Below, in pieces: positions 7,357-63,940 of a stretch of 64,000 nt of DNA. This DNA is from Stegostoma tigrinum. Taxonomy: Eukaryota. The DNA lies in NCBI RefSeq assembly GCF_030684315.1, contig NC_081387.1:11056822-11120821 (forward strand), given 5' to 3'. The notes under the pieces were generated by a model. That model was given only the letters and a program-made list of their open reading frames with translations. It was not told the DNA's origin and did not search any database. The stretch's first letter is position 1. Every line of letters begins with the position of its first letter. Made by a program: the position numbers and the translations under genes.

Positions 7357-7620
7357 CGTAAATCACTACCAGCTTGTCCTCCAGCCCGCTGTGTTCCACC
7401 TGACAGGAATACTCAGCCTGATCCACCGGATCAAACTCCATCCATTTCCGGATCTGGTAGGTCCTGTCATGATTGGGTAAGATTCCAGTGGACAGTGTCT
7501 CATCAACCAATACTCCATCCCTCCACAGGGTCACCTCGATGGCTTGGGGGTAAAACCCAGTAACGAGACAGGACAGCTGGTTGGAATTGCCCAGACGGGT
7601 AAGGGACACGATGGGGGCAA
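7357..7620 (-). CDS. MHC class I gene A, exon 4 (alpha3, Ig C1 domain)
   Basis: 264 nt, AG/GT-bounded, phase 1-1. LSCLVTGFYPQAIEVTLWRDG...LPNHDRTYQ...YSCQVEHSGL with both Cys. Confidence 0.96.
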
Positions 7621-7745: not shown

Positions 7746-8018
7746 CTACACTCAGTTCTCTCTGTCCATATTCCAGGTATTTCCTCAGCCACTCAACACA
7801 CTCCACCTCCAAAAAATGCTTCCATTGCTGGTTGTTGAACTTATCCTGGTCCAAGTTGTTTTTGATGCTGTCCGCCCAGGGGACTTGGGTCACCCACACG
7901 ACATGATCCTTATCGAAACTGATAATGCCTTGTCCATCCCACCCATATTGATTGACAGCACTCACCATCTCATTGTCCCTCAGATCACAACCGATCATCA
8001 TCTGCAATGTGTGAATCC
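7746..8018 (-). CDS. MHC class I gene A, exon 3 (alpha2)
   Basis: 273 nt, AG/GT-bounded, phase 1-1. GIHTLQMMIGCD...QYGWDG...ECVEWLRKYLEYG with the C101/C164 pair. Confidence 0.96.
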
Positions 8019-8199: not shown

Positions 8200-8460
8200 C
8201 GTCTGTCTGGTTGGTCAGTGACATCACTATTGGAAAATAGTGTCTGAAAACATCCTCCCGCTTCTGAATGAGGAATAGTTTCCTTTTCCACAACTCAGGC
8301 CCCTCACTCTCCACCATCCACTGTTCCCGGGGGATTAGCTCTTTCCGATCACTGTCGTACATAACAAACTGGACCCCATCCACATAACCAACAAGCACAA
8401 ACTCTGGGAAACTGGGAATTGGAGTCATGCCAGTGGCAAAATACCGGACAGAGTGAGTGT
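8200..8460 (-). CDS. MHC class I gene A, exon 2 (alpha1)
   Basis: 261 nt, AG/GT-bounded, phase 1-1. THSVRYF...PEFVLVGYVDGVQFVMYDSD...WM...NQT sequon. Confidence 0.96.
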
Positions 8461-14010: not shown

Positions 14011-15059
14011 AATGGGTGTCCTGTGCTGACGTTGTCCTCTCAGTATGTGATCTGTGTCCTGGACTGATATTGTGCCTCTCTGTCTGAGCGCTGTGTCCTG
14101 TACCGATAGTGTAGCTCTCATATGGTCATCTGGGGTAAGTACTGACTCAATCCCTCTCAGTCATTGAGCTTGGGCCTGTCCTGATACTTCAGTCTGAGGG
14201 CTGTGTCCCGTATTGATTGTATCTCATTTCAGTTTGTGAGCTGAGATCTGCAGTGATATTGCCCCCGCAGTTTGTGAGATGTGTTATCTATTAATTCTTT
14301 TGCACTCTGTGTCTTATATTGATACTGTCACTCTCAGTCAATGAGATTTGTCCTGATCTGACATAATTCCTCACTTTTAGTGGCCTGGGCCCTGTTCTGA
14401 TACGGGTCCTCTCAAAGTGTAGATGTGCTCTGTCCTAATTTTATCATTCTCAGTCAGTGAGTTATGTCTTGGACCTGTACTATACTACTCACTTGACGTG
14501 ATGTGTCTTGTACCCATATTGTCCCGTCAGACTGTGAGCATTGTCCTGAATAGTTTCTGTCCTTCAATCCTGTCTGGTATTAATACTGTCCCACTCAGTC
14601 TATAAGGTATGTCCTGTACTGGCACACTCACTGTCAACAGTGTCCTGTGCTGATACTATCCTTCTCCAACTCTGCTCTGTGTACTGTACTATTAGTGTCT
14701 CAATCCAGTCTATTGCCCCTATTGAGCCAAGTCCTGTATTGAATCTGTCGTATTCTGTCCATGTCCTGTCTTGGCACTGTCCGTCTCAGTCTGGAAGCTG
14801 TGTCCTTACTGAAAATACCCTTCCCAGTTTGTGAAAGTTATTGATGAACGTATCCCTCTCTGTCCATATCCTATATTGATACAGAGTCAATTCAATCTGT
14901 GAGTTGGGCCTGACAGTCCCAAGCATTCTGTGATTTGTGTCCACTATTGATTCTAGCCCTCGACTTCCATGTGCCATATTAATACTGCTCTGCTCTATCT
15001 GTAAATTATACTGACACTCCACCTTAGTCAGTGAGCTGTGTCCTATATCAATATCGCAC

Positions 15060-15895
15060 CTCTCAGTCTGTGAGCAACATTCTACACTGGCAGTATTCCT
15101 CTCAGTCTGTGAGCAACGTTCCACACTGGCAGTACTCCTCTCAGTCTGTGAGCAACATTCTACACTGGCAGTATTCCTCTCAGGCTGTGAGCAACATTCT
15201 ACACTGGCAGTATTCCTCTCAGTCTGTGAGCAACGTTCCACACTGGCAGTATTCCTCTCAGTCTGTGAGCAACATTCTACACTGGCAGTATTCCTCTCAG
15301 GCTGTGAGCACATTTCTACACTGGCAGTATTCCTCTCAGTCTGTGAGCACATTTCTACACTGGCAGTATTCCTCTCAGGCTGTGAGCAACATTCTACACT
15401 GGCAGTATTCCTCTCAGTCTGTGAGCAACATTCTACACTGGCAGTATTCCTCTCAGTCTGTGAGCACATTTCTACACTGGCAGTATTCCTCTCAGGCTGT
15501 GAGCAACATTCTACACTGGCAGTATTCCTCTCAGGCTGTGAGCAACATTCTACACTGGCAGTATTCCTCTCAGGCTGTGAGCAACATTCTACACTGGCAG
15601 TATTCCTCTCAGGCTGTGAGCAACATTCTACACTGGCAGTATTCCTCTCTGGCTGTGAGCAACATTCTACACTGGCAGTATTTCTCTCAGGCTGTGAGCA
15701 ACATTCTACACTGACAGTATTCCTCTCAGGCTGTGAGCAACATTCTACACTGGCAGTATTCCTCTCAGTCTGTGAGCACATTTCTACACTGGCAGTATTC
15801 CTCTCAGGCTGTGAGCAACTTTCTACACTGGCAGTATTCCTCTCAGGCTGTGAGCAACATTCTACACTGGCAGTATTCCTCTCAGGCTGTGAGCT
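15060..15895. repeat. Homogeneous 39-bp minisatellite (~21 copies)
   Basis: Unit CTCTCAG(G/T)CTGTGAGCAACATTCTACACTGGCAGTATTC; gives the 13-aa periodicity in the ORF track. Confidence 0.97.
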
Positions 15896-17969: not shown

Positions 17970-20240
17970 GTAGAACAGTACAGGCCCTTTGGCCCACGGT
18001 GTTGTGCTGAATTTTTACACTAATCCTCAGGCCTGTCTAATCTCCACCTCTATCTTATACTATCATCCATATGTCTATCTAACAGCCGCTTAAATGCCCC
18101 AAATGAGACCGACTCCACTACCCTCTCCAGCAATGCCTTCCATGCCCCGATCACTCTCGAAGTAAAGAACCTACCTCTGACGACTCCCCTATATCTACCT
18201 CCACTCACTCTGCCCCCTCGTAAAAGCTACATCCACCCTAAGAAAATGTTTCTGGCTACCTCTGATCATTTTGGACACCTCTATCAAGTCACCTCTCATC
18301 CTTCCTCTTTCTAAAGAGAAAATCCCTAGTTCTCTCAAACTTTCCTCGTGAGACCTTCCCTCCATTGTAGGCAACATCCTGGTAAATCTCCTCTGCACCT
18401 TTTCCAATGCTTCCACATGTTTCCAGTAATGAGGTGACCAGAACTGGACACAATACAGTACTGTCACAATGGCGGAGTGGACTTGATGGGCCGAATGGCC
18501 TTACTTCCACTCCTACGTCTTATGGTCTTAATATTCCAGATGTGGCCGAACCAGGGTTTTGTATAGCTGGAGCATAACTTCCCAACCTTGAACTCAATCC
18601 CTCTATTACTGAAAGCTAACACAGCATACACCTTCTTAACAACTCTATCCACCTCGGTGGAAGCTTTCAGGGAACTGTGGACATGAATCCCAAGATCCCT
18701 CTGCTCCTCCACACTGCCAAGAATCTTTCCGTTAACCCTGTATTCTGCTTTCAATTTTGTCCTTCCAAAATGAATCACGTCACATTTGTCAGCGTTAAAA
18801 TCCATCTGCCACTTCTCAGCCCAGCTCTGCATCCTATCGATGTCCATTTGTAGCCTAGAACAGCCCTCTGCACGATCCACAGCTCGACGCACCTTTGTAT
18901 CATCTGCGAACTCACTAATCCACTCTTCCACTCCTACATCCAAATCACTTACAAAAATCACAAATAGAAGAGGACCCAGAACAGATCCTTGTGGTACACC
19001 ACTCGTAACTGAGCACCGTACTGAATATTTTCCGTCCACTACCACCCTTTCTCTTCTAAGGGTCAGCTAATTCTGAATCCAATCTGCCACATTTCCCCCT
19101 ATCCCATGCCTCCTTATCCTCTGCATGAGCCTACCATGGGGAACCTTATCAAATGCCTCACTTAAGTCATGTATACCGCATCCACTGCTCTACCTTCATC
19201 CACGTGTTTGGTCACCTCTTCGAAGAATTCAATAAGGTTTACGAGGCATGATCTACCCCTCACAAATCCATGCTGACTATCACGAATCAAACTGTGCCTT
19301 TTCAAGTGATCACAAATCCTATCTCTCAGAGCCAGTTCCAATAATTTGCCCACCACTGATGTGAAACAAACTGGCCTGTAATTCCTGGGGTTAACCCTAT
19401 TCCCTTTTTGAACAAGGGAATGATGTTTGCCTCTCTCCAACCTTCTAGTAGTATACCCATGGACAGTGAGGATGAACAGATCACCAAAGGCCCTGCAATG
19501 TTTTCCCTCACTTCCCACAGAATCGTTGGATAAATCCCATCAGGCTTGGGGGACTTATCTATCTTCAAGTCTCTCAAAATTCCTAGTGCATCTTCCTTAC
19601 TAACATTGACCTCATCAAGCCTATCAACCTGTTTCACACTGTTCTTCTATACAACTAGGTCCCTCTCAGTTGTGAATATTGAAGAAAAGTACTCATTAAG
19701 GACCTGTCCTATCTCTTTAGGCTCAGTGCACAAATTCCCTTTACAATCCTAGATTGGCCCTACCCTTTCTCCGGTCATTCTCTTATTCCTCACGTACATG
19801 TAAGAAGCTTTGGAGTTTTCCTTGGTCCTATCTGCCAAGGTTTTCTCATGCCCCCTTACAGCTCTCCTAAGCCCTTTCTTCAGTTCCTTCCTGGATAACC
19901 TATATCCCTCTAGAGCCTTTTCCATTCCTTGTTTCCTAAACCTTACATAAGCCTCCTTCTTCCTCTTAACCAGTCTTTTGACCTCTCTTGAGAACCAAGG
20001 CTCCCTCACTCGACCACATCTTCCCTGCCTGCTAGGGACAAACATATCGAGTACACGCAGTATGCACTCCTTAAACAATCTCCACGTTTCAATAGTGCTC
20101 TTCCCTGACAGCATCTGTTCCCAATTTATGTTGCCCAGTTCTTGCCTAACAGAATTGTAATTATCCTCCCCCCAATTATAAACCTTGCCCTGATGTATGT
20201 ACCTTTTCTTTTCCATGACTATTGTAAAAGTAACAGAGTT
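17970..20240 (-). mobile_element. CR1 LINE ORF2 (degenerate); continues at ~22095-22255 beyond a nested Penelope
   Basis: GVPQGSVLGP, FADDTKV and DSQHGFVRGRSCL fragments. The endonuclease-region piece LEVPRFRCFKRNRE lies on the far side of the Penelope insert. Confidence 0.9.
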
Positions 20241-20269
20241 AAGATTTTTTTCTGAAGAAGGTCTAGGCA

Positions 20270-22085
20270 TGAAACAGTGACAATGGGAACTGCAGATGCT
20301 GGAGAATCCAGGATAATAAAATGTGAGGCTGGATGAACACAGCAGGCCCAGCAGCATCTCAGGAGCACAAAAGCTGACGTTTCAGGCCTAGACCCTTCAT
20401 CAGAGAGGGGGATGAGGAGAGGGTTCTGGAATAAATAGGGAGAGAGGGGGAGGCAGACCAAAGATGGAGAGAAAAGAAGATAGGTGGAGAGGAGAGTATA
20501 GGTGGGGAGGTAGTGAGGGGATAGGTCAGTCCAGGGAAGACGGACAGGTCAAGGAGGTGGGAGGAGGTTAGTAGGTAGGAAATGGAGGTAGGGCTTGAGG
20601 TGGGAGGAGGGGATGGGTGAGAGGAAGAACAGGTTAGGGAAGCGGAGCCGTGCTGGGCTGGTTTTGGGATGCAGTTGCGGGGAGGGGAAGAGCTGGGCTG
20701 GTTTTGTGATGCATTGGGGGGAGGGGTCGAACTGGGCTGGTTTTGGGATGCTGTGGAGGAAGGGGAGATTTTGAAGCTTGTGAAGTCCACGTTGATACCA
20801 TTGCGCTGCAGGGTTCCCAAGCAGAATATGAGTTACTGTTCCTGCAACCTTCGGGTGGCATCATTGTGGCACTGCAGGAGGCCCAAGATGGACATGTCAT
20901 CTGAGGAATGGGAGGGGGAGTTAAAATGGTTTGCGACTGGGAGGTGCAGTTGTTTATTGCGAACCGAGCGGAGGTGTTCTGCAAAGCAGTCCCCAAGTCT
21001 CCGCTTGGTTTCCCCAATGTAGAGGAAGCCACACACAGTATACTACATTGGCAGATGTGCAGGTGAACATCTGCTTAATATGGAAGGTCATCTTGGGGCC
21101 TGGGATGGGGGTGAGGGAGGAGGTGTGGGGGCAAGTGTAGCGCTTCCTGCAGTTGCAGGAGAAGGTGCCGGGTGTGGTGGGCTTGGAGGGGAGTGTGGAG
21201 CGGAAAAGGGAGTCACGGAAAGAGTGGTCCCTCTGGAAAGCAAACAAGGGTGGGGATGGAAAAATAGGGTCGGATTGTAGATGGCGGAAGTGTCGGAGGA
21301 TGATGCGTTTTATCCGGAGGTTGGTGGGGTGGTATGTGAGAACGAGGGGGATCCTCTGGGGGCAGTTGTGGCGGGGGCGGGGTGTGAGCGATGTGTTGCG
21401 GGAAATGCGAGAGATGCACTCAAGAGCGTTCTCGACCACTGCAGGGGGAAAGTTGTGTTCCTTGAAGAACGTGGACATCTGGGATGTGTGGGAGTGAAAG
21501 CCCCATCCTGGGAGCAGATACGGCGGAGGTGGAGGAATTGGGAATAGGGGATGCAATTTTTCCAGGAGGGTGGGTGGGAGGAGGTGTATTCTAGGTAGCT
21601 GTGGGAGTCAGTGGGCTTGAAATGGACATCAGTTTCTAGCTGGTTACCTGAGATGGAGACTGAGAGGTCCAGGAAGGTGAGGGATATGCTGGAGATGGCC
21701 CAGGTGAACTTGAGGTTGGGGTGGAAGGTGTTGGTGAAGTGGATGAACTGTTCGAGCTCCTCTGAGGAGCAAGAGGTGGCGCCGATACAGTCATCAATGG
21801 AACAGAGGAAGAGGTGGGGTTTGGGGCCTGTGTAGGTGCGGAAGAGGGACTGTTCCACATAACCTACAAAGAGGCAGGCATAGCTTGCGCCCGTGCAGGT
21901 ACCCATGGCCACCACCTTTGTCTGTAGGAAGTGGGAGGAGTCGAAAGAGGAGTTGTTGAGGGTGAGGACGAGTTCGGCTTGGCGGATGAGGGTGTCGGTG
22001 GAGGGGGACTGGTCTGGCATGCGGGACAATGTCAGCTTTCCTGCTCCTCTGATGCTGCTTGGCCTGCTGTATTCATCCAGCTCTC
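20270..22085 (-). mobile_element. Penelope-like retroelement (RT + GIY-YIG endonuclease) with inverted terminal piece at 22030-22085
   Basis: RT: FLQTKVVAMGT..YACLFVG..IDDCIG, FLDLSV, HFKPTDSHSYL. GIY-YIG: CGFLYIGETKRRLGDCFAEHL...PVANHFN. Confidence 0.92.
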
Positions 22086-25047: not shown

Positions 25048-27088
25048 GTAGTGATTGTAACAGCTCGATTCACAGAATATGAATTCCCTGATTGGGGCTG
25101 TTAATCTTGTCCAATCTGGAATTCCTGGCTGACAGATAAAAATAGAAACAGATTTTGGCTAATACAGAGCATAAATACACCCAGATAGTGGAGGATGGTT
25201 TCACAGTCATATTCACAGTCAGGAAATTCCACCAATACCTTTAGAGACAAATTTGTAATAACAATGGATCAAAAGCCCCTGCTGGTTCTAATTAAAGAGA
25301 ACAAGGCAGTGCAGCCCATAGCTTCAGGCCAAATTCTGAGTGTGTGAAGTTGGAACACCATTCAGGAGCCCAGTGGCAAATGTGGATGCGCTGAGTCACC
25401 TCCCACTGGCAGACACACCATTGGTGGTATCTCTGTGGGATAATAAATTTTTTGGGCACACTTCGAATTACTGCTGACAACATCAGACTTCGGATGGAGA
25501 AAGACCCATTCCTGGAAACACTGAGAAAACTGGTGGTGATGGGGGAAACCAAAGGGCCATCATAATCAGAATTGAAATCTCTTTTGGACATAGAGAACCT
25601 AGATCACAGTAGAGGATGGCATATTATAATGGGGAGCAGAAGTGATTGCTTGGAGCAAAGGTCGCTGCCAGATACTGGCTGAACTCCACCAGGGTCATTC
25701 AGCTGTTACCAAAATGAAGATGTTAGCCCGATATTTTGTCTGATGGCCTGGATTGGACGCCAGCATAGTTGGTGGACCAGATTGCCAACCAGGACAAAAG
25801 CTACCAGCAGCTCGCCCACAGTTGTGGAATTGGCCGGGTAAATCCTGAGCTTGGTTACAACTCAGCTATGCAGATCCTTAATGGGCTTAATGTTTTTAAT
25901 TAATGTGGTCACCTACTCAAAGTGGTTGAACGTGAAAACATGGTGATGGAAAGATTGTGCCCATCTATTGTAAAACATGGACCCCTGGAGGTTTGGTCGT
26001 AGGGCCCTTTTACCAGCAAGAAATTTAAGCATGTCCTAAAAGCAAATGGTATTTTACATACAAGAATAGATTCACACCATTCATCATCCAGTAGTCCAGC
26101 AGAAACAGCAGCCCGAATGCTAAAAGCATGTTTAAAGAAACAGCCTGCAGCATCGATAGAAACCAAACTGTCCCAGCTCCTATTTGATTATATAACATTC
26201 ATGCAACTACAAGAATAGCTCCAGCAGGGTTGCTGATGCAGAGAAGACTCCTCACCACGTTAAAACCGATCTTTTTGACTTGAGGGGGAGAGTGAAATGG
26301 CATCAGAATGGCAATGCCAGACACAAGACTCTGCTAAGCAAGAGAAACAGTTTACTTCAGGGGACGAAGCTTAGAGTAGAAACCATGGGAATGGTCCTGC
26401 ATGGGCAAAAGCCATAGTAGGCATGTGGTCAGGTCTAAAGTTTGGGCAGGTGCGTCAGCCCTGACCACGCACAGGGACCATATGAATGCTGCTAACTCAC
26501 AAAACAGTATGGGTCCAAAATGTGAGATAACAAGGTGTAGAGCTGGATGAACACGGCAGGCTAAGCAGCACCAGAGGAGCAGGAAAGCCGAGAGCCTTCT
26601 TCAGATTCTCCAGCATCTGCAGTTCCTACTATCTCTGGGTCCAAATTGTGCCTGGATCCTTCACAGATTTTCTGACTGATCCAGAACCCGTGGGTTCTCC
26701 CTCTCTGTCAAGTGTTGAAGCGATCTCAAAATCTGAAATGGACATGGTGGATGTCACTGCCGCAACACAGCACAAGGAAGAGAACACATTTCTTCCAAGA
26801 TCCTCTAGGCTCGGGAGGTGTACTACTGCACCTTATATGTCGCACATATCTGTGGCAGGGTTGAAAAAAACTGTCCTGGTGTTAAAATGCCTCAGGAGGA
26901 GCTACAAAAAAAGAGAACCTGTCTATGTTCTCTGACTCAGAGGGTGAGGAATGTGGTGATTGTAAAGAGGTCAGCCAGGTGGACCTCAGTTAATATAAGT
27001 TCCCTGACTGGGACTGTTAATCTGGTCATATCGGGGATCCCTGGCTGACCGACAGAAACACCAGTGTCAGGCATCCTGTGTGTAACAA
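25048..27088 (+). mobile_element. Ty3/Gypsy LTR retrotransposon remnant (deleted) with partial LTRs at ~25048-25150 and ~26952-27088
   Basis: Direct repeats TGT(A/G)GTGATTGTAA...TTCCCTGA(T/C)TGG..CTGTTAATCT; purine tract before the second copy. Internal DALSHLPL, ELHQGH...KMKMLAR...WPGLD and integrase remnants. Confidence 0.8.
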
Positions 27089-27283
27089 CGGATCGATTGA
27101 AGGTGAAAACATGAAGTCAGATAAATCACAGCCCCATAAACCATTCTGACAGGAACATAGTCCAGAGTAACATCCCCAGTACAGAACAGCACTGTCGGCC
27201 CTTACACCCCAATGCCCACGGATTGAGGACTAATGCCCCAGCACCCAGCCTGGTTCTCCTCCCCTCACATCCCCATTACTTAC

Positions 27284-27332
27284 CTGCAGAGAGCTCTCCA
27301 CACAAAAGCCCCAGCACTATCAGTCCGATCAT
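27284..27332 (-). CDS. MHC class I gene A, exon 1 (signal peptide MIGLIVLGLLCGELSA)
   Basis: 49 nt, ATG to phase-1 donor G|GTAAGT, in frame with the alpha1 acceptor at 8460. Paralogous to the exon at 63892-63940. Not in the ORF track. Confidence 0.88.
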
Positions 27333-27495
27333 TTTGACATCATCTGGAAATTCGTGAGAAGTCATTTTCCAGCGGAGTGTCTCAATCTGTGAGCTGCGTC
27401 TGGACCGATATTAAAACTCTGCTCCTGTTCACTCAAACACCTTGATACCGTTTGGACTCAATCAAAATTAAAAGGCTCTTTACATAATAGACTCC

Positions 27496-27522
27496 GAAAG
27501 AAAATTGAAAATTCACTTCCCC
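27496..27522. promoter_or_regulatory. IRF/ISRE-like and ETS-IRF-like motifs
   Basis: GAAAGAAAATTGAAA on + and GGGGAAGTGAAT on -, between the Y box and the ATG of gene A. Imperfect matches. Confidence 0.45.
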
Positions 27523-27537
27523 AAGAATGCGAACAAC

Positions 27538-27602
27538 CCAATCAGATAAATACTCCCAAACCTATCATCGGTTGCCGGGAGAATGAGCCGAGCTGCAAGT
27601 TG
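27538..27602 (-). promoter_or_regulatory. MHC SXY enhanceosome module of gene A
   Basis: Gene-sense: S-like CAACTT (27602-27597), 17 nt, X1 CCCGGCAACCGATG (27579-27566), 20 nt, Y CTGATTGG (27545-27538). About 205 nt upstream of the ATG. Confidence 0.8.
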
Positions 27603-27919
27603 CCTTCGAGAAACTTTTTGGAACAGGCGGAGACAATTCAGTCTCTTGGACCTGCGTTTTACAACGTGCCGCAGGCTTTAGTTTTTCTGTGTTTAAACAG
27701 TCAAATCATATTAACTACATAAACAGTTCGATCAGATTTTCACTCTTCTATCTGATATGGAACTCAGCACACCAGAGCAAAACAAAACGGTGAAGAATCA
27801 AGTGCTGACAGGATGAGATTTGCCTCAGCAGATCCCCACAATCCCATTTTGTCATGAGTCTGATTCACTCTGCGTGAGATGAGAAACGGCTGAAACGGCA
27901 GCAGAGGCTACGGGTCCTG

Positions 27920-28430
27920 AAAATATCCTGGCAGCAATCCTGAGGACCTGTACTCCATAACTTTTCACATCCCTAGTCAGACAGCTATCATACACAGTAA
28001 TGTGAAAATTGCTTCCAAGTGTGAGCTGTCCACAAAAGGCTGTACTATTCCAACACAGCCAGTTACCCACCAGAGCAATGTACTCTCCATTATCAGAAAA
28101 TGATGGGAGTATGTCATTGACAGTGCTATCAATTTCACCAAAACTCAGCCTGGGTTTCGCTGGGGCCTGGTATTTCCTGACCACATTACAGCCTTGCTCC
28201 AAAGATGGATGCAAAATCTTATTACAACAGGTGATGTGAGACTGAATGCCCATCACACCAAATCAGCATTTGACTGAGCATGGCATCACAGAGCTCGAAC
28301 AAAATAAGTCAATAGTAACCAGGGTGAAAAGTCTCCTCTGGATGGAGTCATAGCTTACACAAGGATTGTCTTTATTCGAGGTCAATCCTCTCTGCTCCAG
28401 GACAGCACTATAGGAAATGCACAGGGTGAT
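27920..28430 (+). mobile_element. Old LINE (CR1-group) RT fragment
   Basis: Degenerate RT-region sequence; its right end forms the left arm of the palindrome below. Confidence 0.55.
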
Positions 28431-28696
28431 GAATCTACTTGCTCACTAAGAAGTCTTTAATGCAATGAGAACAATGCAGCACTACTGTAATTTGCAGAAC
28501 TAAATAACTTTAAAGGAGGGAGAATAATGCATTAAAGACTTCTAAGTGAGCAAGTAGATTCATCACCCTGTGCATTTCCTATAGTGCTGTCCTGGAGCAG
28601 AGAGGATTGATCTCCAACAAAGACAATCTTTGTGTAAGCTATGACTCCATCCAGAGGAGACTTTTCACCCTGGTTACTATTGACTTATTTTGTTCG
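28296..28696. repeat. Near-perfect inverted repeat: 169-bp arms (28296-28464, 28528-28696), 63-nt spacer
   Basis: CGAACAAAATAAGTCAATAG...GAAGTCTTTAATGCA is mirrored by TGCATTAAAGACTTC...CTATTGACTTATTTTGTTCG with only a handful of mismatches. Confidence 0.95.
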
Positions 28697-28699
28697 GTA

Positions 28700-31600
28700 T
28701 TTTTTGTGGTATGATGTGGAGGTGCCAGAGTTGGACCGGAGTGGACAAGATCAAAAAAACCAGGTTATAGACCAACAAGTTTGCTTGAAAACACAAGTTT
28801 TTGGAGACTCTTTCCTTCTTCAGATTTTTGTGAGAGAGAAAGCAAAAAGGCACAGAATTTGTAAGTAAAAGATCAAAGGCTCATACACTGGTGTGAATTG
28901 ACCAGACCTAAGATGCTTTTAAATATTTAATCAGTTGGAAAGGAGATACAGCTTTTGATTCACTAATATGCAAATCCCCAAATTTCTGCCCATAGATAAG
29001 TAAAGATTTTATCAAAGAGGAGGTGACATCTCAGGTCAGATAATGCATGTGAGGTCTGAAGCCCTGTTTAGAATCTGCTTGTGTTTCGACTTATAGTCAG
29101 ATTTATAAAGTAGGAATTTATAAAACGCCACATTGACTGACAGTCTACAAATTGTGTGCTTTTTGAACAAAATAGAATGTATTTGCAAATATAAATCTAT
29201 AAATGCAAATTCACCCCGGTGTGTTTGTGTGTGTGTGTGTGTGTGATTGTGCATATGTGTAAGTGTATATTGTGGTGGGCCACCTGTAGTGCGACATGAA
29301 CCCAAGATCCCAGTTGACGATGTTCTCATGTGTATCAAGCTTGGCTAAGAGCCTCGACTCAGCGACTGCATTGTTGTGGATTCTGAAGACATTCTTAGAA
29401 CATAGAACATAGAACAGTACAGCACAGAACAGGCCCTTCAGCCCACAATGTTGTGCCGACCATTGATCCTCATGTATGCACCCTCAAATTTCTGTGACCA
29501 TATACATGTCCAGCAGTCTCTTAAATGTCCCCAATGACCTTGCTTCCACAACTGCTGCTGGCAACGCATTCCATGCTCTCACAACTCTCTGCGTAAAGAA
29601 CCTGCCTCTGACATCCCCTCTATACTTTCCACCAACCAGATTAAAACTATGACCCCTCATGCTAGCCATTTCTGCCCTGGGAAATAGTCTCTGGCTATCA
29701 ACTCTATCTATGCCTCTCATTATCTTGTATACCTCAATTAGGTCCCCTCTCCTCCTCCTTTTCTCCAATGAAAAGAGACCGAGCTCAGTCAACCTCTCTT
29801 CATAAGATAAGCCCTCCAGTCCAGGCAGCATCCTGGTAAACCTCCTCTGAACCCTCTCCAAAGCATCCACATCTTTCCTATAATAGGGCGCCCAGAACTG
29901 AACATTTACGCAAAGATCCAAGGCTGAATGCCCTTGACTGCTGAAGTGTTGCACCACTGCTCCTGTGTGGCGATTGTTTCACAGTGCCAGTTCATCCATT
30001 GTCGTAGCGCCTGCATTTTTTGCCAATATACCATGCCTCGGGCATCCTTGCCTGCAGCATATGAGATAGGCAGCGTTGGCTGAGTCACATGAGTATCTGC
30101 TAGAAATCACATAGTGGATTTCTGCTGCCTTCTGAAGATACACAAAGACAACACACCTGAACATCTCATCATATCAGGCAATGGGGCTCTGTGTGAGAAA
30201 GTCTCTGGCTATGGCAAGGGCATCTTGAAACCCATTGTACCGGGAACTCCCAGCTTCTGTCATGACACTACAGATTTCTTACAGAAACTCATTACCCATG
30301 GACCAGTTGAACAAGGAGTATTCCTTGTCACAACGGACATTTCGGCACTCTATACCAGCAGCCCCCATGATGATGGCATCACTGCAACAGCCTTAGTATT
30401 CAATACCAACAACGGCCAATTTCCAGACACCATTTTATAACTCAGTGATAATGTGAACTGCAGATGCTGGAGAATCCAACATAACAAAGTGTGGAGCCCG
30501 AAACATCAGCTTTTGTGCTCCTGAGATGCTGCTTGGCCTGCTGTGTTCATCCAGCTCCACACCATTTTATAACTCATCCGCTTCATCCTTAAGTCTTCAC
30601 CTTTGACAGCCAATTCTTTATCCAGACACACAGAACAGTCATGGGGGACAGATTTGCACTCCAATGTGCCAACATTTTCATGCACAATTTCAAACAAGAC
30701 TTTTTAGCTGCACAGGACCTCCAAGCAACACTATACACCAGACACATCGACAACATTTTCTTCCTTTGGACTCATGGTGAGGAATCACTAAAACAACTAC
30801 ATAGTGAGATCAACAAGTTTCATCCCACCATCTGACTTACCATGGGCTACTCTTTGGAATGAGTCGCATTCTTGGACATGCATCTCCTTATGGGACAGAC
30901 ATCTCAATACCTCACTCTGCTGCAAGCCTACAGATAACCTCATGATGCTGCACTTCTCCAGCTTCCACTCCCAGAACAAATTAAAAGAGCCAAACCAAAA
31001 ACAAGCCCGACACAGACACGGGATCTGTTCAGATTTGGAGCAACATGACAGACACCTGGAAGTGTTGAAGGACACCCTCATAAGAATGGGATTTGATGCT
31101 CAGTTCATCGAAAACCAGTTCAGACATGCCATAACAAAAAACCATCTTTTCAGCCACCAACACATTATCGCTGATGATGACCACTTCATCAAGGTCTTTC
31201 CACTTGTCACCTTCAAACAATTGCCAAACCTTAAACAATGATTGTCTATCCAGCCTTCAGGAAAACATTGACCACAACCCTATACAACCCTGTCATGGCA
31301 AACTTTGCAAGACATGACAGATCATTGACACAGATATTGCCATCACACATGGGAACACCACTCACCACGTACACGGCAGATACTCATGTGACTCTGCCAA
31401 TGTTGTCTCAAACACTGCAGGCATGGTATACCAGTGAAGCCATGCAGACACTATGACAATGGATGAATGGGCACCATGCAACAATCAACTCACAGGGATA
31501 TTCCCTCCCAGTGGGGGAACACTTCAAAATTCAAGGGCATTCAGCCTTGGATCTTTGAGTAAACATCCTCCAAGGAGGTCTTCAGGATCCACTAGAACAC

Positions 31601-51624: not shown

Positions 51625-51863
51625 NNNNNNNNNNNNNNNNNNNNNNNNNNNNNNNNNNNNNNNNNNNNNNNNNNNNNNNNNNNNNNNNNNNNNNNNNNNN
51701 NNNNNNNNNNNNNNNNNNNNNNNNNNNNNNNNNNNNNNNNNNNNNNNNNNNNNNNNNNNNNNNNNNNNNNNNNNNNNNNNNNNNNNNNNNNNNNNNNNNN
51801 NNNNNNNNNNNNNNNNNNNNNNNNNNNNNNNNNNNNNNNNNNNNNNNNNNNNNNNNNNNNNNN
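51625..51863. other. Assembly gap (N run)
   Basis: Direct reading; flanked by GA-rich sequence. Confidence 0.99.
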
Positions 51864-56199: not shown

Positions 56200-59100
56200 G
56201 GACGCGAACCAGACCCACCCACTGCTTTATGCTGTTTCTACTTCTCGAGTCATCATATTGCAACATTTTCAGCGTAGGTACCCAAAATGAGGCGGTGAGA
56301 TTCTCGACTGGCTGAAATTTCGAACTGCTGACTGCCTGTACACGAAGTAGTGCAAATGTTACCTGCTGCATATGTGTCCCAGCCTGAGAGTGGTGAAAGA
56401 GGTGGATGGGATCCTGGACTTTGTAACCACAGGCGTTTCCAAACAGGTTTGAGCTGAATTTCCATCAGGGTTGTAATCTCCGATTTCTCAGAAGAGAATT
56501 TTCAACCCTCGATTGAAGCCTCTGCAGAAGCAGATTAAGAATTGGTCTAAGCCTCAACGTCAATAAGACACAAATCCTGTTCCAACCTGTTTGAGATGAA
56601 CTTCTAATCTATCCCTCCATTAAGATCAATGGATGACTCCTCCCAAATGTGGAACATTTCCCCACCTGGGAGGCTACATCTCATCTAAGAATGATATCAG
56701 TGCTAAGATTTAACATCACATCCAATCTGTGAGCACTGCCTTCCAATTCCTCAGGTTGGGAGACTTCAATGACCATGATATCTGTGATGATGTCAAGATC
56801 CTTTTATAAAAAGAAATCATCCATCCAACTCTTTCCCATCATTCCAAAACTTGGACTATATACAGATTCCATTCTCAAGAGCCTTGAGAAACTCTATCAA
56901 CACAGGATGGATAGAAAAGGGGGCAAGAGAGAAGGGAGAGTGGCATTTGTGATTAGGAATGGTAATATGGTCGTACTTAGGGAGGCTATTCCTGATATTC
57001 CAGGCCATTGTGTTAAGGGCTTAGATGGAGAGGAATTTATTGAAGGTGTACAAGAAATTGTTCTGATTCAGTAAGTGGACGTACCTACGACAGAATGAGC
57101 AAAAACCTGAGGTACTCTTGGGAAATAAGGCACGGCAGGGGACTAAGATGTCAGTGGGGAGCACTTTGGGGGCCATGATCAGAATTCTGTTGGTCTTAAA
57201 AATGTGATGGAACAGGACAGACTGAATCTAAAAGTTAAATTTCTAAATTGCAGAAAGGCTGATTTTGATGGTATTACGCAAGAGTTTACAGAAGTTGATT
57301 TTGGGTGGATATTTGCAGGTAAAGGGATGGCTGGAAAATGGGAAGCTGTCAAAATGAGACAATGAGAGTCCAGAGACAGTTTGTTTCTGTTACGGTAAAG
57401 GACAAGCTTGCTGGATGAATAGAAAAATTGTCATCTTGTTCACAAAAAAAAAGAAGCATAAGTCAGGGAAAGATAGCAGGGATCGAGCAAATCCCTACAG
57501 GAGTACAAAGGCAATAGGAGCATATTTAAGAAGGAAATCAGGAGGGCAAAACAAGGACGTGAGACAGCTTTGGCAAATAGAGCTGAAGCAGAATCCAAAG
57601 AGATTCTACAAGTACATTAAGGAGTACAGGCTAACTGCGGAGAGAATACGGCCCCTTAAATAACAACAAGGCTACCGACATGTGGAGCTGCAAGAGGTGG
57701 GGGAGATACTAAACAAGTATATTGCATCAGTATTTACTGTGGAGAAGGACATGGAAGATATAGAACATGGAACATAAATAGCCACATCTTGAAAAACGTC
57801 CATATTACACGGGAGGTGGCGCTGTGCGTCTTAGAATGCATGAAGTTGGATTTATCCCCCAGACCTGATCAGGCATAGCCTAGAACTTTGTGAGAAGCAA
57901 GGGAAGTGATTACTGGGCCTGTTGCTGAGACATTTGTATCATGGATAGCCAGAGGTAAAGTGCCAGAAGACTGAAGGTTGGCTAACGTGGTGTCACTATT
58001 TCAGAAAGGTGGTAAGGAAAAGCCAGGAAACTAAAGACCGGTGAGCCTGACATTGGTGGTGGGAATGTTGTTTGGAGGGAATCCGGAGGGACAGGATTTA
58101 TTTGTATTTGGAAAGGCAAGGAAATTTTAGGGATAGTCACCATGGCTTTGTGAGTGGGAAATCATGTCTGACTGAGCGGATTGAGTTTTTTGAAGAAGTA
58201 ACGCAGAGGATTGCCGATGGCAGTGCAGTGGAGATGATTTATATGGACTTCAGTAAGGCATTTGAGAAGGTTTGATGTGGTAAACTGGTTAGCAAGGTTA
58301 GATCACGTGGAATACGTGGGCAACTAGCCATTTGGTTACAGAACTGGCTTGAAAGTAGTGGTAGAGGGTTGCTTTTCAGATTAGAGACCTGTAACCAGTG
58401 GTGTGCCACAATGATCAGTGCTGGGTCCACTGTTTTTTGTCATTTATATAAGTGATTCAATGTGAACATAAGAGGTATGAATAGTAAGCTTGCAGATGAC
58501 ACCAAAATTGGAGATGTAACGGACAGCGAAGAACATTACCTCAGACTACAATGGGACCTTAATCAGATGGGCTGATGGGCCAAGGAGTGGCAGCTGGAGT
58601 TTGATCTTGATAAATGTGAGATGCTACAGTCTGGTCAGACAAATCAGGGCAGGACTTATACAATTAATGGTAAGGTCGTGGGGAGTGTTGCTCAATTAGA
58701 TCTTTTAGTGCAAGTTTGTAGTAACCTGAAAGTGGAGTCGCAGGTAGATAGGATCGTGAACATAGCATTTTGTTTGCTTGCCTTTAATGGTCAGTGCATG
58801 GAGTACAAGAGTTGGGAGGTCGTGTTGCTTCTGTACAGGCTATTGATTAGGCAACAGTTGGAATACTGTGTGTAATTCTGGTCTCCCTGCTTTGGAAAGG
58901 ATGTTGAGAAACTTGAAAGGGTTCAGAAAAGATTTACAAGGATGTTGCCAGAGTTGGAGGGTTTGAGCTATATGGGAAGGCTGAGTATACTGGAGCTATT
59001 TTCCTTGGACCGTCAGAGGATGAGGTGTTGACTTTATAGAAGTTTATAAAATCATGAGGTGCATGGATAGGTGAAATAGACAAGGTGTAATCCCTGGGGT

Positions 59101-63891: not shown

Positions 63892-63940
63892 CTGCAGAGA
63901 GCTCTCCACACAGAAGCCCCAGCACGAACAGTCGGATCAT
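63892..63940 (-). CDS. MHC class I gene B, exon 1 (signal peptide MIRLFVLGLLCGELSA)
   Basis: 49 nt, ATG to phase-1 donor G|GTGGGT, in frame with the alpha1 acceptor at 55344. Not in the ORF track. Confidence 0.9.

What the first reader, a model, noticed from the sequence alone, without database searches (positions are those of the whole stretch)
27538..27602. Mammal-like S-X-Y enhanceosome module upstream of a shark non-classical class I gene
Seen (gene-sense): CAACTT-N17-CCCGGCAACCGATG-N20-CTGATTGG. As I recall, HLA-DRA has CCTAGCAACAGATG-N20-CTGATTGG, so 11/14 X1 positions, the whole Y octamer and the spacing match. The S-like hexamer resembles the class I CAACCT S box linked to NLRC5, while X1/Y look class II-like and X2/CRE is weak. 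Inference: RFX/NF-Y with NLRC5 or CIITA control dates to the jawed-vertebrate ancestor and extends to this non-classical lineage, perhaps as a hybrid I/II module.
Basis: partly seen in the sequence, partly recalled or inferred. Interest (0 to 1): 0.8.

Follow-up and report, generated by a model that had tools for sequence, protein, structure and literature searches.

The report
Shark class I promoter S-X-Y module
A short, correctly spaced set of MHC-type control motifs sits just upstream of the first exon of a zebra-shark non-classical class I gene, and it resembles a mouse class II promoter more than a mouse class I promoter.

Summary
On the minus strand lie CAACTT (27602-27597), 17 nt, CCCGGCAACCGATG (27579-27566), 20 nt, CTGATTGG (27545-27538).

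The module is 206-270 nt upstream of the conserved leader ATG (27332) of a Stegostoma tigrinum class I gene, XP_048375730.2. It is single-copy DNA. It lies 24-35 nt upstream of the 5' end of spliced cDNA contigs from a related species.

An X1-like site (at least 10 of 14 to mouse H2-Eb) plus 18-21 nt plus the exact Y octamer is expected 0.005 times per window.

The gene is non-classical: six of eight peptide-end anchor residues are changed, and it sits in a 100/100 clade apart from classical shark class I.

S, X1 and Y all match mouse class II H2-Eb better than mouse class I H2-K. X2 is not CRE-like.

Conservation in paralogous and orthologous promoters could not be tested. Factor binding is inferred.

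The scan had already noted SXY-like modules elsewhere in this genome. I file it as a new member of a known kind, of moderate interest.

The parts
27610..27616 (-). AAGTTTC, a W/ISRE-half-like heptamer directly upstream of the S region
   Evidence: Aligns with AAGTTTC of the mouse H2-Eb forward primer and with AGTTTC (start of AGTTTCACTTCT) of the H2-K primer in the colinear alignments. The second ISRE half is absent (sequence). Function is inferred.
27594..27607 (-). S-like box GAAGGCAACTTGCA.
   Evidence: 11/14 identical to the mouse H2-Eb S region, with a 1-nt longer distance to X1. 120 of 20000 random anchors score as high.
27566..27579 (-). X1 box CCCGGCAACCGATG (predicted RFX site)
   Evidence: It is the only 0-mismatch match to CCYRGCAACNGATG in the window. 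10/14 to H2-Eb X1 and 9/14 to H2-K X1.
27561..27567 (-). X2 position, TGATAGG. It is not CRE-like.
   Evidence: shark TGATAGG, H2-Eb TGATGCT, H2-K TGACGCG.
27538..27545 (-). Y box CTGATTGG (inverted CCAAT, predicted NF-Y site), 20 nt after X1
   Evidence: 8/8 to H2-Eb Y. Spacer is 20 nt, against 19 in H2-Eb and 20 in H2-K.
27511..27522 (-). GGGGAAGTGAAT, an ETS/IRF-composite-like motif at the mapped 5' end of the cDNA contigs. A T-rich TTTTCAATTTTCTTTC follows at 27511-27496.
   Evidence: Sequence only. The motif names are recalled consensus and were not tested.
27284..27514 (-). Exon 1: 5'UTR plus leader. The NCBI start ATG is at 27365, the conserved MIGL... ATG is at 27332, and the splice donor follows 27284.
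   Evidence: P0290 residues 1-27 map to 27365-27285 at 100%. cDNA contigs of organism B start exactly at 27284 and run to 27503 (X9, with 11 more letters unaligned) or 27425 (X10), with no cover of the intron side.
8200..8460 (-). Exon 2 (alpha-1 domain)
   Evidence: Pfam MHC_I E=1e-16. 100% to P0290 within the exon (86 of 86 residues); the tblastn piece is 98.9% over 89 aa because it runs past the exon ends.
7746..8018 (-). Exon 3 (alpha-2 domain)
   Evidence: Pfam MHC_I E=2.3e-21. 100% to P0290.
7357..7620 (-). Exon 4 (alpha-3, Ig C1-set)
   Evidence: Pfam C1-set E=1.3e-16. 100% to P0290.

Best explanation
This is the proximal promoter control module of a zebra-shark non-classical MHC class I gene. 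It is homologous in layout to the mammalian MHC S-X-Y module.

Inferred mechanism: an RFX-type complex binds X1 (core GGCAAC). NF-Y binds the inverted CCAAT of the Y box two helical turns downstream. The S element, one to two turns upstream, helps fix a platform that recruits an NLR-type co-activator, a CIITA or NLRC5 orthologue. Transcription then starts a few tens of bases downstream.

Shown here: the motifs, their order, orientation and spacing; their rarity; their place just upstream of a transcribed, spliced first exon; and greater likeness to a mouse class II module than to a mouse class I module.

Inferred only: every protein-DNA contact, the co-activator, and the age of the module.
For: - Motifs and spacing are as described.
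- The combination is expected 0.005 times per 64 kb, by two tests.
- X1-Y spacing is 20 nt, against 19 in H2-Eb and 20 in H2-K (primers from PMC4374748). Ludigs 2015 states that spacing is tightly constrained: S-X 16 bp and X-Y 20-22 bp by their box definitions.
- The S region is 11/14 to H2-Eb at +1 nt; 120 of 20000 random anchors are as good.
- The whole H2-Eb S-X1 primer aligns colinearly. The promoter tile is matched or beaten by 4, 11 and 1 of 2118 window tiles under three scoring schemes.
- The module lies in single-copy DNA (27111-28019), flanked by repeats.
- The exon 1 donor at 27284 is used in spliced contigs of a related species, whose 5' end reaches about 27503-27514.
- The NCBI model XP_048375730.2 joins this exon to alpha-1.
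- The leader is conserved in nurse, epaulette, horn and smooth-hound shark proteins.
- Whale shark has direct orthologues of CIITA and NLRC5 (PMC8455134, one passage).
Against: - No conservation test was possible. Gene B's promoter lies beyond the window, and its 60 nt of 5'UTR in the window do not align convincingly with gene A's.
- Plain local and ungapped whole-primer comparisons with the mouse modules did not single out the promoter.
- X2 is not CRE-like.
- The Y box is only about 24-35 nt from the mapped 5' end of the cDNA contigs. This is closer than I recall for mammals, and contig ends are not true start sites.
- The RNA evidence is from organism B. No RNA run of the window's own species was listed.
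- NCBI isoform X2 of gene A lacks exon 1, so another start may exist.
- In salmon cells the enhanceosome factors seemed not to drive IFN-gamma induction of MHC genes (PMC7573153, passages).
- Likeness to class II rests on one mouse gene per class.
Confidence: 0.6

Rival explanations
1. It is a generic X-box plus CCAAT promoter. Other RFX family members and NF-Y bind it and drive basal transcription, with no CIITA/NLRC5-type co-activator and no enhanceosome logic.
For: X2 is missing. Loose X-Y pairs are common by chance. Salmon data question the role of the enhanceosome in fish.
Against: The S region matches the H2-Eb S box at the right distance. X1-Y spacing matches the MHC modules within 1 nt. 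The gene is an MHC class I gene.
Confidence: 0.2
2. It is a promoter relic. The motifs descend from an ancestral MHC promoter but no longer matter, and the gene is driven by the ETS/IRF-like elements near the start site or by another promoter.
For: An earlier follow-up in this scan judged other SXY cassettes in this genome to be probable leftovers (s1-881500, not checked here). Gene A has an NCBI isoform without exon 1. Gene B has an alternative first coding exon at 56465-56364.
Against: X1 and Y are intact, whereas the orphan cassettes were described as gene-less. The module sits directly upstream of a used first exon.
Confidence: 0.12
3. It is a chance juxtaposition of short motifs.
For: Each box alone is at chance frequency. 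Whole-primer scans were unremarkable.
Against: The combined pattern is expected 0.005 times per window. The single hit falls in the 300 nt upstream of a class I leader exon, in the right orientation, with an S-like match as well.
Confidence: 0.03

Closest known systems
Mouse MHC class II H2-Eb1 S-X-Y module (CIITA-type), as printed in the primers of Ludigs et al. 2015, PMC4374748
   Same: The order is AAGTTTC, S, X1, Y. S is 11/14, X1 is 10/14 and Y is 8/8. Both read TGAT after X1. The X1-Y spacer is 20 nt against 19, and S-X1 is 1 nt longer.
   Different: It sits before a class I gene, not a class II gene. The spacers are unrelated. Binding and co-activator are untested.
Mouse MHC class I H2-K S-X-Y module (NLRC5-type), same paper
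   Same: It precedes a class I gene. AGTTTC lies upstream of S. The pyrimidine-rich stretch before X1 matches 10/14. The X1-Y spacer is 20 nt in both.
   Different: The S box is not matched. X1 is 9/14 and Y is 6/8. H2-K has a CRE-like X2 (TGACGCG) and the shark does not. The H2-K primers score at background in 5 of 6 scans.
W/S, X2 and Y motifs reported in teleost class I promoters (stated in PMC7573153, passage seen, which cites earlier salmon and trout work)
   Same: They are non-mammalian class I promoters with SXY-type motifs.
   Different: They are in bony fish and in classical U-lineage genes. I did not see their sequences.
Other SXY-like modules noted by this scan in the same genome (s1-881500 near TAP1, s1-882130 upstream of CD74, s1-881612)
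   Same: They are in the same genome with the same motif family.
   Different: Those are distal or gene-less. This one is a proximal promoter next to a used first exon. I could not read their sequences.

Membership tests
MHC S-X-Y promoter module | X1 box (RFX site) of the MHC type | tested here: met
   CCCGGCAACCGATG is 10/14 to H2-Eb X1 and 9/14 to H2-K X1. It is the only exact match to CCYRGCAACNGATG in the window.
MHC S-X-Y promoter module | Y box (inverted CCAAT) downstream of X in the same orientation | tested here: met
   CTGATTGG is 8/8 to H2-Eb.
MHC S-X-Y promoter module | Constrained X-Y spacing | tested here: met
   20 nt, against 19 in H2-Eb and 20 in H2-K, with the same box edges. 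The constraint is stated in PMC4374748.
MHC S-X-Y promoter module | S (W/S) box at a fixed distance upstream of X | tested here: met
   11/14 to the H2-Eb S region at +1 nt; 120 of 20000 random anchors are as good. This rests on one reference gene. The published logos are in figures that I could not see.
MHC S-X-Y promoter module | X2 box (CRE/ATF-like) abutting X1 | tested here: inconclusive
   TGATAGG is not CRE-like. The H2-Eb reference (TGATGCT) is not either, while H2-K (TGACGCG) is.
MHC S-X-Y promoter module | Lies in the proximal promoter of an MHC or MHC-pathway gene, upstream of the start site | tested here: met
   It is 206-270 nt upstream of the leader ATG. The cDNA contigs end about 24-35 nt downstream of Y.
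MHC S-X-Y promoter module | Occupied by RFX5/RFXAP/RFXANK and NF-Y, and dependent on CIITA or NLRC5 | not testable with these tools
   This needs ChIP, EMSA or reporter assays.
MHC S-X-Y promoter module | Conserved in orthologous and paralogous promoters | not tested
Gene B's promoter is outside the window. The metagenome scan found nothing.
NLRC5-type (class I) SXY subtype | Distinctive class I S box, as in H2-K | tested here: not met
   The best H2-K match upstream of X1 is in the spacer, not on the S box (10/14, 977 of 20000). This rests on one reference gene only.
Shark multicopy non-classical class I lineage (I recall it as UBA) | Clade with nurse shark O19479 and horn shark O19480, apart from classical class I | tested here: met
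   The clade has 100/100 support and includes genes A and B. The name UBA for these entries is recalled, not seen.
Shark multicopy non-classical class I lineage (I recall it as UBA) | Loss of the conserved peptide-end anchor residues | tested here: met
   Y59L and R84L against 6LUP. T143I, K146N, W147L and Y159F against Triakis classical class I. Y7 and Y171 are kept. The list of eight positions is recalled.

The most novel reading that the evidence does not exclude
Sharks use one class II-type S-X-Y module for class I genes, non-classical ones included, as well as for class II pathway genes. On this reading the distinct NLRC5-specific S box of mammalian class I genes is a later invention. The split of labour between CIITA and NLRC5 would then be set by other means in sharks, or not yet be set at the DNA level.
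Probability: 0.2. Interest if true: 0.7.

Novelty: new member of a known kind. Interest (0 to 1): 0.45.

Why it matters
The S-X-Y module is the shared switch of mammalian antigen-presentation genes. In mammals the S box decides whether CIITA or NLRC5 is used (PMC4374748).

I found no paper that analyses such modules in cartilaginous fish. Most subscription journals were not searchable.

A proximal, intact module on a shark non-classical class I gene, reading class II-like in all three boxes, gives a concrete construct for testing. It could show when the class I and class II branches of this control system separated. It could also show whether non-classical shark class I genes share regulation with the classical pathway.

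Tried and rejected
Tried without result:
No shark promoter outside the window could be read.
- A scan of metagenome contigs for the X1-N19-21-Y pattern found 0.
- The search of earlier findings by sequence was blank.
- Local alignment of the four mouse primers in 200-nt tiles did not rank the promoter among the top six tiles for any primer.
- Ungapped whole-primer identity did not rank it either. The best promoter offset was matched or beaten at 41 to 1078 of about 127,900 offsets.
- Only alignments that allow the 1-nt spacer shifts, and box-anchored tests, gave signal.
- The sigma-70 and terminator scan does not apply to a vertebrate and is disregarded.
- The MAFFT alignment of gene A and gene B 5'UTRs conserved only the leader coding part.

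Rejected:
- A transposon origin, because the DNA is single-copy at 80% likeness.
- A canonical ISRE. AAGTTTC lacks the second half, and the T-rich run downstream has the wrong spacing by recalled consensus.

Not checked or not seen:
That sequence would have come from memory and is human.
- Supplements were not asked for. Supplementary figures S3-S5 of PMC4374748 (logos and spacing) and its main figures 5-6 may bear on the S-box call, and I could not see them.
- The spliced model of the window's gene was searched exon by exon. I left out the joined step. Where a full-length protein was needed I used natural database proteins returned by tools (P0005; P0290, P0202 and others).

Full report
**What is in the sequence**

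Reading the minus strand of 27200-27760 gives these elements in order:
- AAGTTTC at 27616-27610
- 17 nt after that hexamer
- CCCGGCAACCGATG at 27579-27566
- 20 nt
- CTGATTGG at 27545-27538

The pattern search finds exactly this one site.

**Is it more than chance?**

Single boxes are not unusual:
- The Y octamer occurs 6 times in the window against 4.56 expected.
- X1-like sites with up to two mismatches occur 6 times against 5.01 expected. Only the finding is an exact match to CCYRGCAACNGATG.
- Loose X-Y pairs are at chance: GCAAC-N27-31-ATTGG gives 1 observed against 0.69 expected, and 103 of 200 simulations reach it.

The combination is rare:
- GCAACNGATG-N18-26-ATTGG is expected 0.005 times per window, reached in 1 of 200 simulations.
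- A test that uses a printed reference instead of recall gives the same figure. It asks for at least 10/14 to the mouse H2-Eb X1, then 18-21 nt, then the exact H2-Eb Y octamer. It gives 1 observed against 0.005 expected, reached in 5 of 1000 simulations.

The single hit also lies in gene orientation within 300 nt of a class I leader exon.

**The gene**

Two class I genes lie on the minus strand.

Gene A has these exons:
- exon 1 ending at 27284
- alpha-1 at 8460-8200
- alpha-2 at 8018-7746
- alpha-3 at 7620-7357

Pfam gives MHC_I and C1-set hits. The best solved relative is 6lup_A. The 18.8-kb first intron holds reverse-transcriptase debris.

The exons were searched one by one, and I left out the joined step. 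A database search with a natural Mustelus protein returned Stegostoma tigrinum proteins. XP_048375730.2 (P0290) matches exon 1 and the alpha-2 and alpha-3 exons at 100% in tblastn. The alpha-1 exon is also identical residue for residue; its tblastn piece reads 98.9% only because it runs past the exon ends. So the window is zebra shark, and the public model joins the leader exon at 27365-27285 to alpha-1.

The public model starts at an upstream in-frame ATG (27365). Relatives in nurse, epaulette and horn shark start at MIGL..., which corresponds to 27332.

Gene B is XP_059495393.1. Its leader ATG is at 63940.

**Classical or not**

- Against nurse-shark 6LUP, gene A has L for Y59 and L for R84.
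- Against Triakis classical class I it has I, N, L and F for T143, K146, W147 and Y159.
- Y7 and Y171 are kept.
- The list of eight anchor positions is from my own knowledge.

In a maximum-likelihood tree of 27 proteins, genes A and B fall in a 100/100 clade. The clade holds nurse-shark O19479, horn-shark O19480 and a multicopy Mustelus family, apart from the classical clade. I recall this lineage as UBA. No call showed that name for these entries.

A 2023 paper describes multicopy UBA genes in a cluster away from the class Ia region (PMC10751288, passages). A scan note places TAP1 9.7 Mb away. Both fit, but neither is proof.

**Is exon 1 used, and where does transcription start?**

No RNA run of the window's species was listed. 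Laying contigs of four runs on 26000-29000 gave three results:
- Two runs of organism A carry an identical 1328-nt genomic contig over 26998-28325.
- The stretch 27111-28019 is single-copy at 80% likeness, flanked by repeats of very high depth. So the module is not part of a transposon.
- Two runs of organism B each carry a contig that starts exactly at 27284, the splice donor. One runs up to 27503 (X9, 858-nt contig, 14 other letters, 22 gap letters, 11 more letters unaligned). The other runs to 27425 (X10). Both give no cover of the intron side or of 27515-28019, and each has hundreds of letters that continue elsewhere.

The organism B contigs therefore behave as spliced cDNA of a close relative. 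Exon 1 is transcribed there, and the RNA reaches about 27503-27514. That is 24-35 nt downstream of the Y box. Contig ends are only a lower bound for the start site.

**Comparison with printed mammalian modules**

Ludigs et al. 2015 (PMC4374748; passages and sections 21-23 read) make three points:
- S-X and X-Y spacing is tightly constrained.
- The S box decides NLRC5 against CIITA.
- The paper prints primers that span the H2-K (class I) and H2-Eb (class II) modules.

With the same box edges, the shark module compares as follows:

| Feature | Shark | H2-Eb | H2-K |
|---|---|---|---|
| X1 identity to shark | - | 10/14 | 9/14 |
| Y identity to shark | - | 8/8 | 6/8 |
| X1-Y spacer (nt) | 20 | 19 | 20 |
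| Letters after X1 | TGATAGG | TGATGCT | TGACGCG |

Anchored on X1, the best 14-mer match upstream is GAAGGCAACTTGCA against the H2-Eb S region GAAGGGGACCTGCA. It is 11/14, sits 1 nt further from X1, and is equalled at 120 of 20000 random anchors. For H2-K the best match is 10/14 in the spacer, equalled at 977 of 20000.

Gapped local alignment under three scoring schemes gave these counts of tiles, out of 2118, that match or beat the promoter tile:

| Primer | Scheme 1 | Scheme 2 | Scheme 3 |
|---|---|---|---|
| H2-Eb forward | 4 | 11 | 1 |
| H2-Eb reverse | 24 | 85 | 153 |
| H2-K forward | 714 | 872 | 66 |
| H2-K reverse | 349 | 276 | 878 |

Results against my reading:
- A first tile scan did not single out the promoter.
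- An ungapped whole-primer scan did not either.

The likeness therefore lies in the boxes and their spacing, not in the spacers. It rests on one mouse gene per class.

**What follows**

The module is a real S-X1-Y arrangement at the right place. On present evidence it is class II-like in all three boxes, not a hybrid with a class I-type S box.

The S region also repeats the X1 core GGCAAC 28 nt upstream (27604-27599 and 27576-27571). This fits my recollection that S boxes are degenerate X-like sites. X2 is not CRE-like.

That RFX, NF-Y and a CIITA or NLRC5 orthologue act here is inference. Whale shark, of the same order, has direct orthologues of both co-activators (PMC8455134, one passage). 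In salmon cells the enhanceosome factors appeared not to drive IFN-gamma induction (PMC7573153, passages). So function in fish should not be assumed.

**What is known, and novelty**

- A review states that the SXY module is conserved across vertebrates (PMC7281430, passages).
- W/S, X2 and Y motifs are reported for teleost class I promoters (PMC7573153).
- Seven full-text searches found no analysis of such modules in cartilaginous fish.
- Two shark MHC papers do not contain the word promoter.
- Much of the field is in subscription journals that were not searchable.
- This scan had already noted SXY-like modules on other DNA of this genome: s1-881500, s1-882130 and s1-881612. It also noted a CCAAT pair 61 nt past this window, at gene B's promoter: s1-881544. 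I could not read those sequences, so they are leads only.

I file the finding as a new member of a known kind.

**Limits**

- Gene A also has a public isoform without exon 1.
- Gene B has an alternative first coding exon at 56465-56364. Other start sites may therefore exist.

Noticed in passing
window 26505-26706: An extremely abundant short repeat. Summed contig depth is in the millions in all four runs of both organisms. Many 'opposite strands' joints lie between about 26523-26530 and 26599-26605, and the loose ends are A/T-rich. It looks like a SINE- or hairpin-type element in intron 1 of gene A.
   Followed up: no
window 27365-27333: The public model of gene A starts at an upstream in-frame ATG (MTSHEFPDDVK before MIGL...). 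Relatives in other sharks start at MIGL. The true start codon is open.
   Followed up: partly
window 56364-56465 (minus): An alternative first coding exon of gene B lies inside its first intron. It belongs to isoforms X1/X3 (MEIQLKPVWKRL...), replaces the signal peptide and implies a second promoter.
   Followed up: partly
window 14786-15781: A long tandem array reads as a repeated 13-residue unit (CSQPERNTASVEC-like) in an open frame of 331 codons. It is probably a minisatellite, not a gene.
   Followed up: no
window 18195-22029 and 29487-29978: Reverse-transcriptase-like open frames (LINE debris) lie in intron 1 of gene A and upstream of its promoter. Copies recur at 37.8-42.3 kb.
   Followed up: no
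window 27855-28262 (minus): An open frame of 136 codons lies just upstream of the promoter with no Pfam match. It is partly single-copy and partly moderately repeated by depth.
   Followed up: partly
window 51625-51863: A run of 239 N lies next to the transmembrane exon of gene B (51624-51526). It was left as it is.
   Followed up: no
window 27561-27566: The X2 position reads TGATAG, which fits the recalled GATA-factor consensus WGATAR. It may be chance.
   Followed up: no
runs X12-X14: Three large bisulfite-sequencing runs of the window's species exist as raw reads (2026). They could give the methylation state of the two CpGs inside X1.
   Followed up: no
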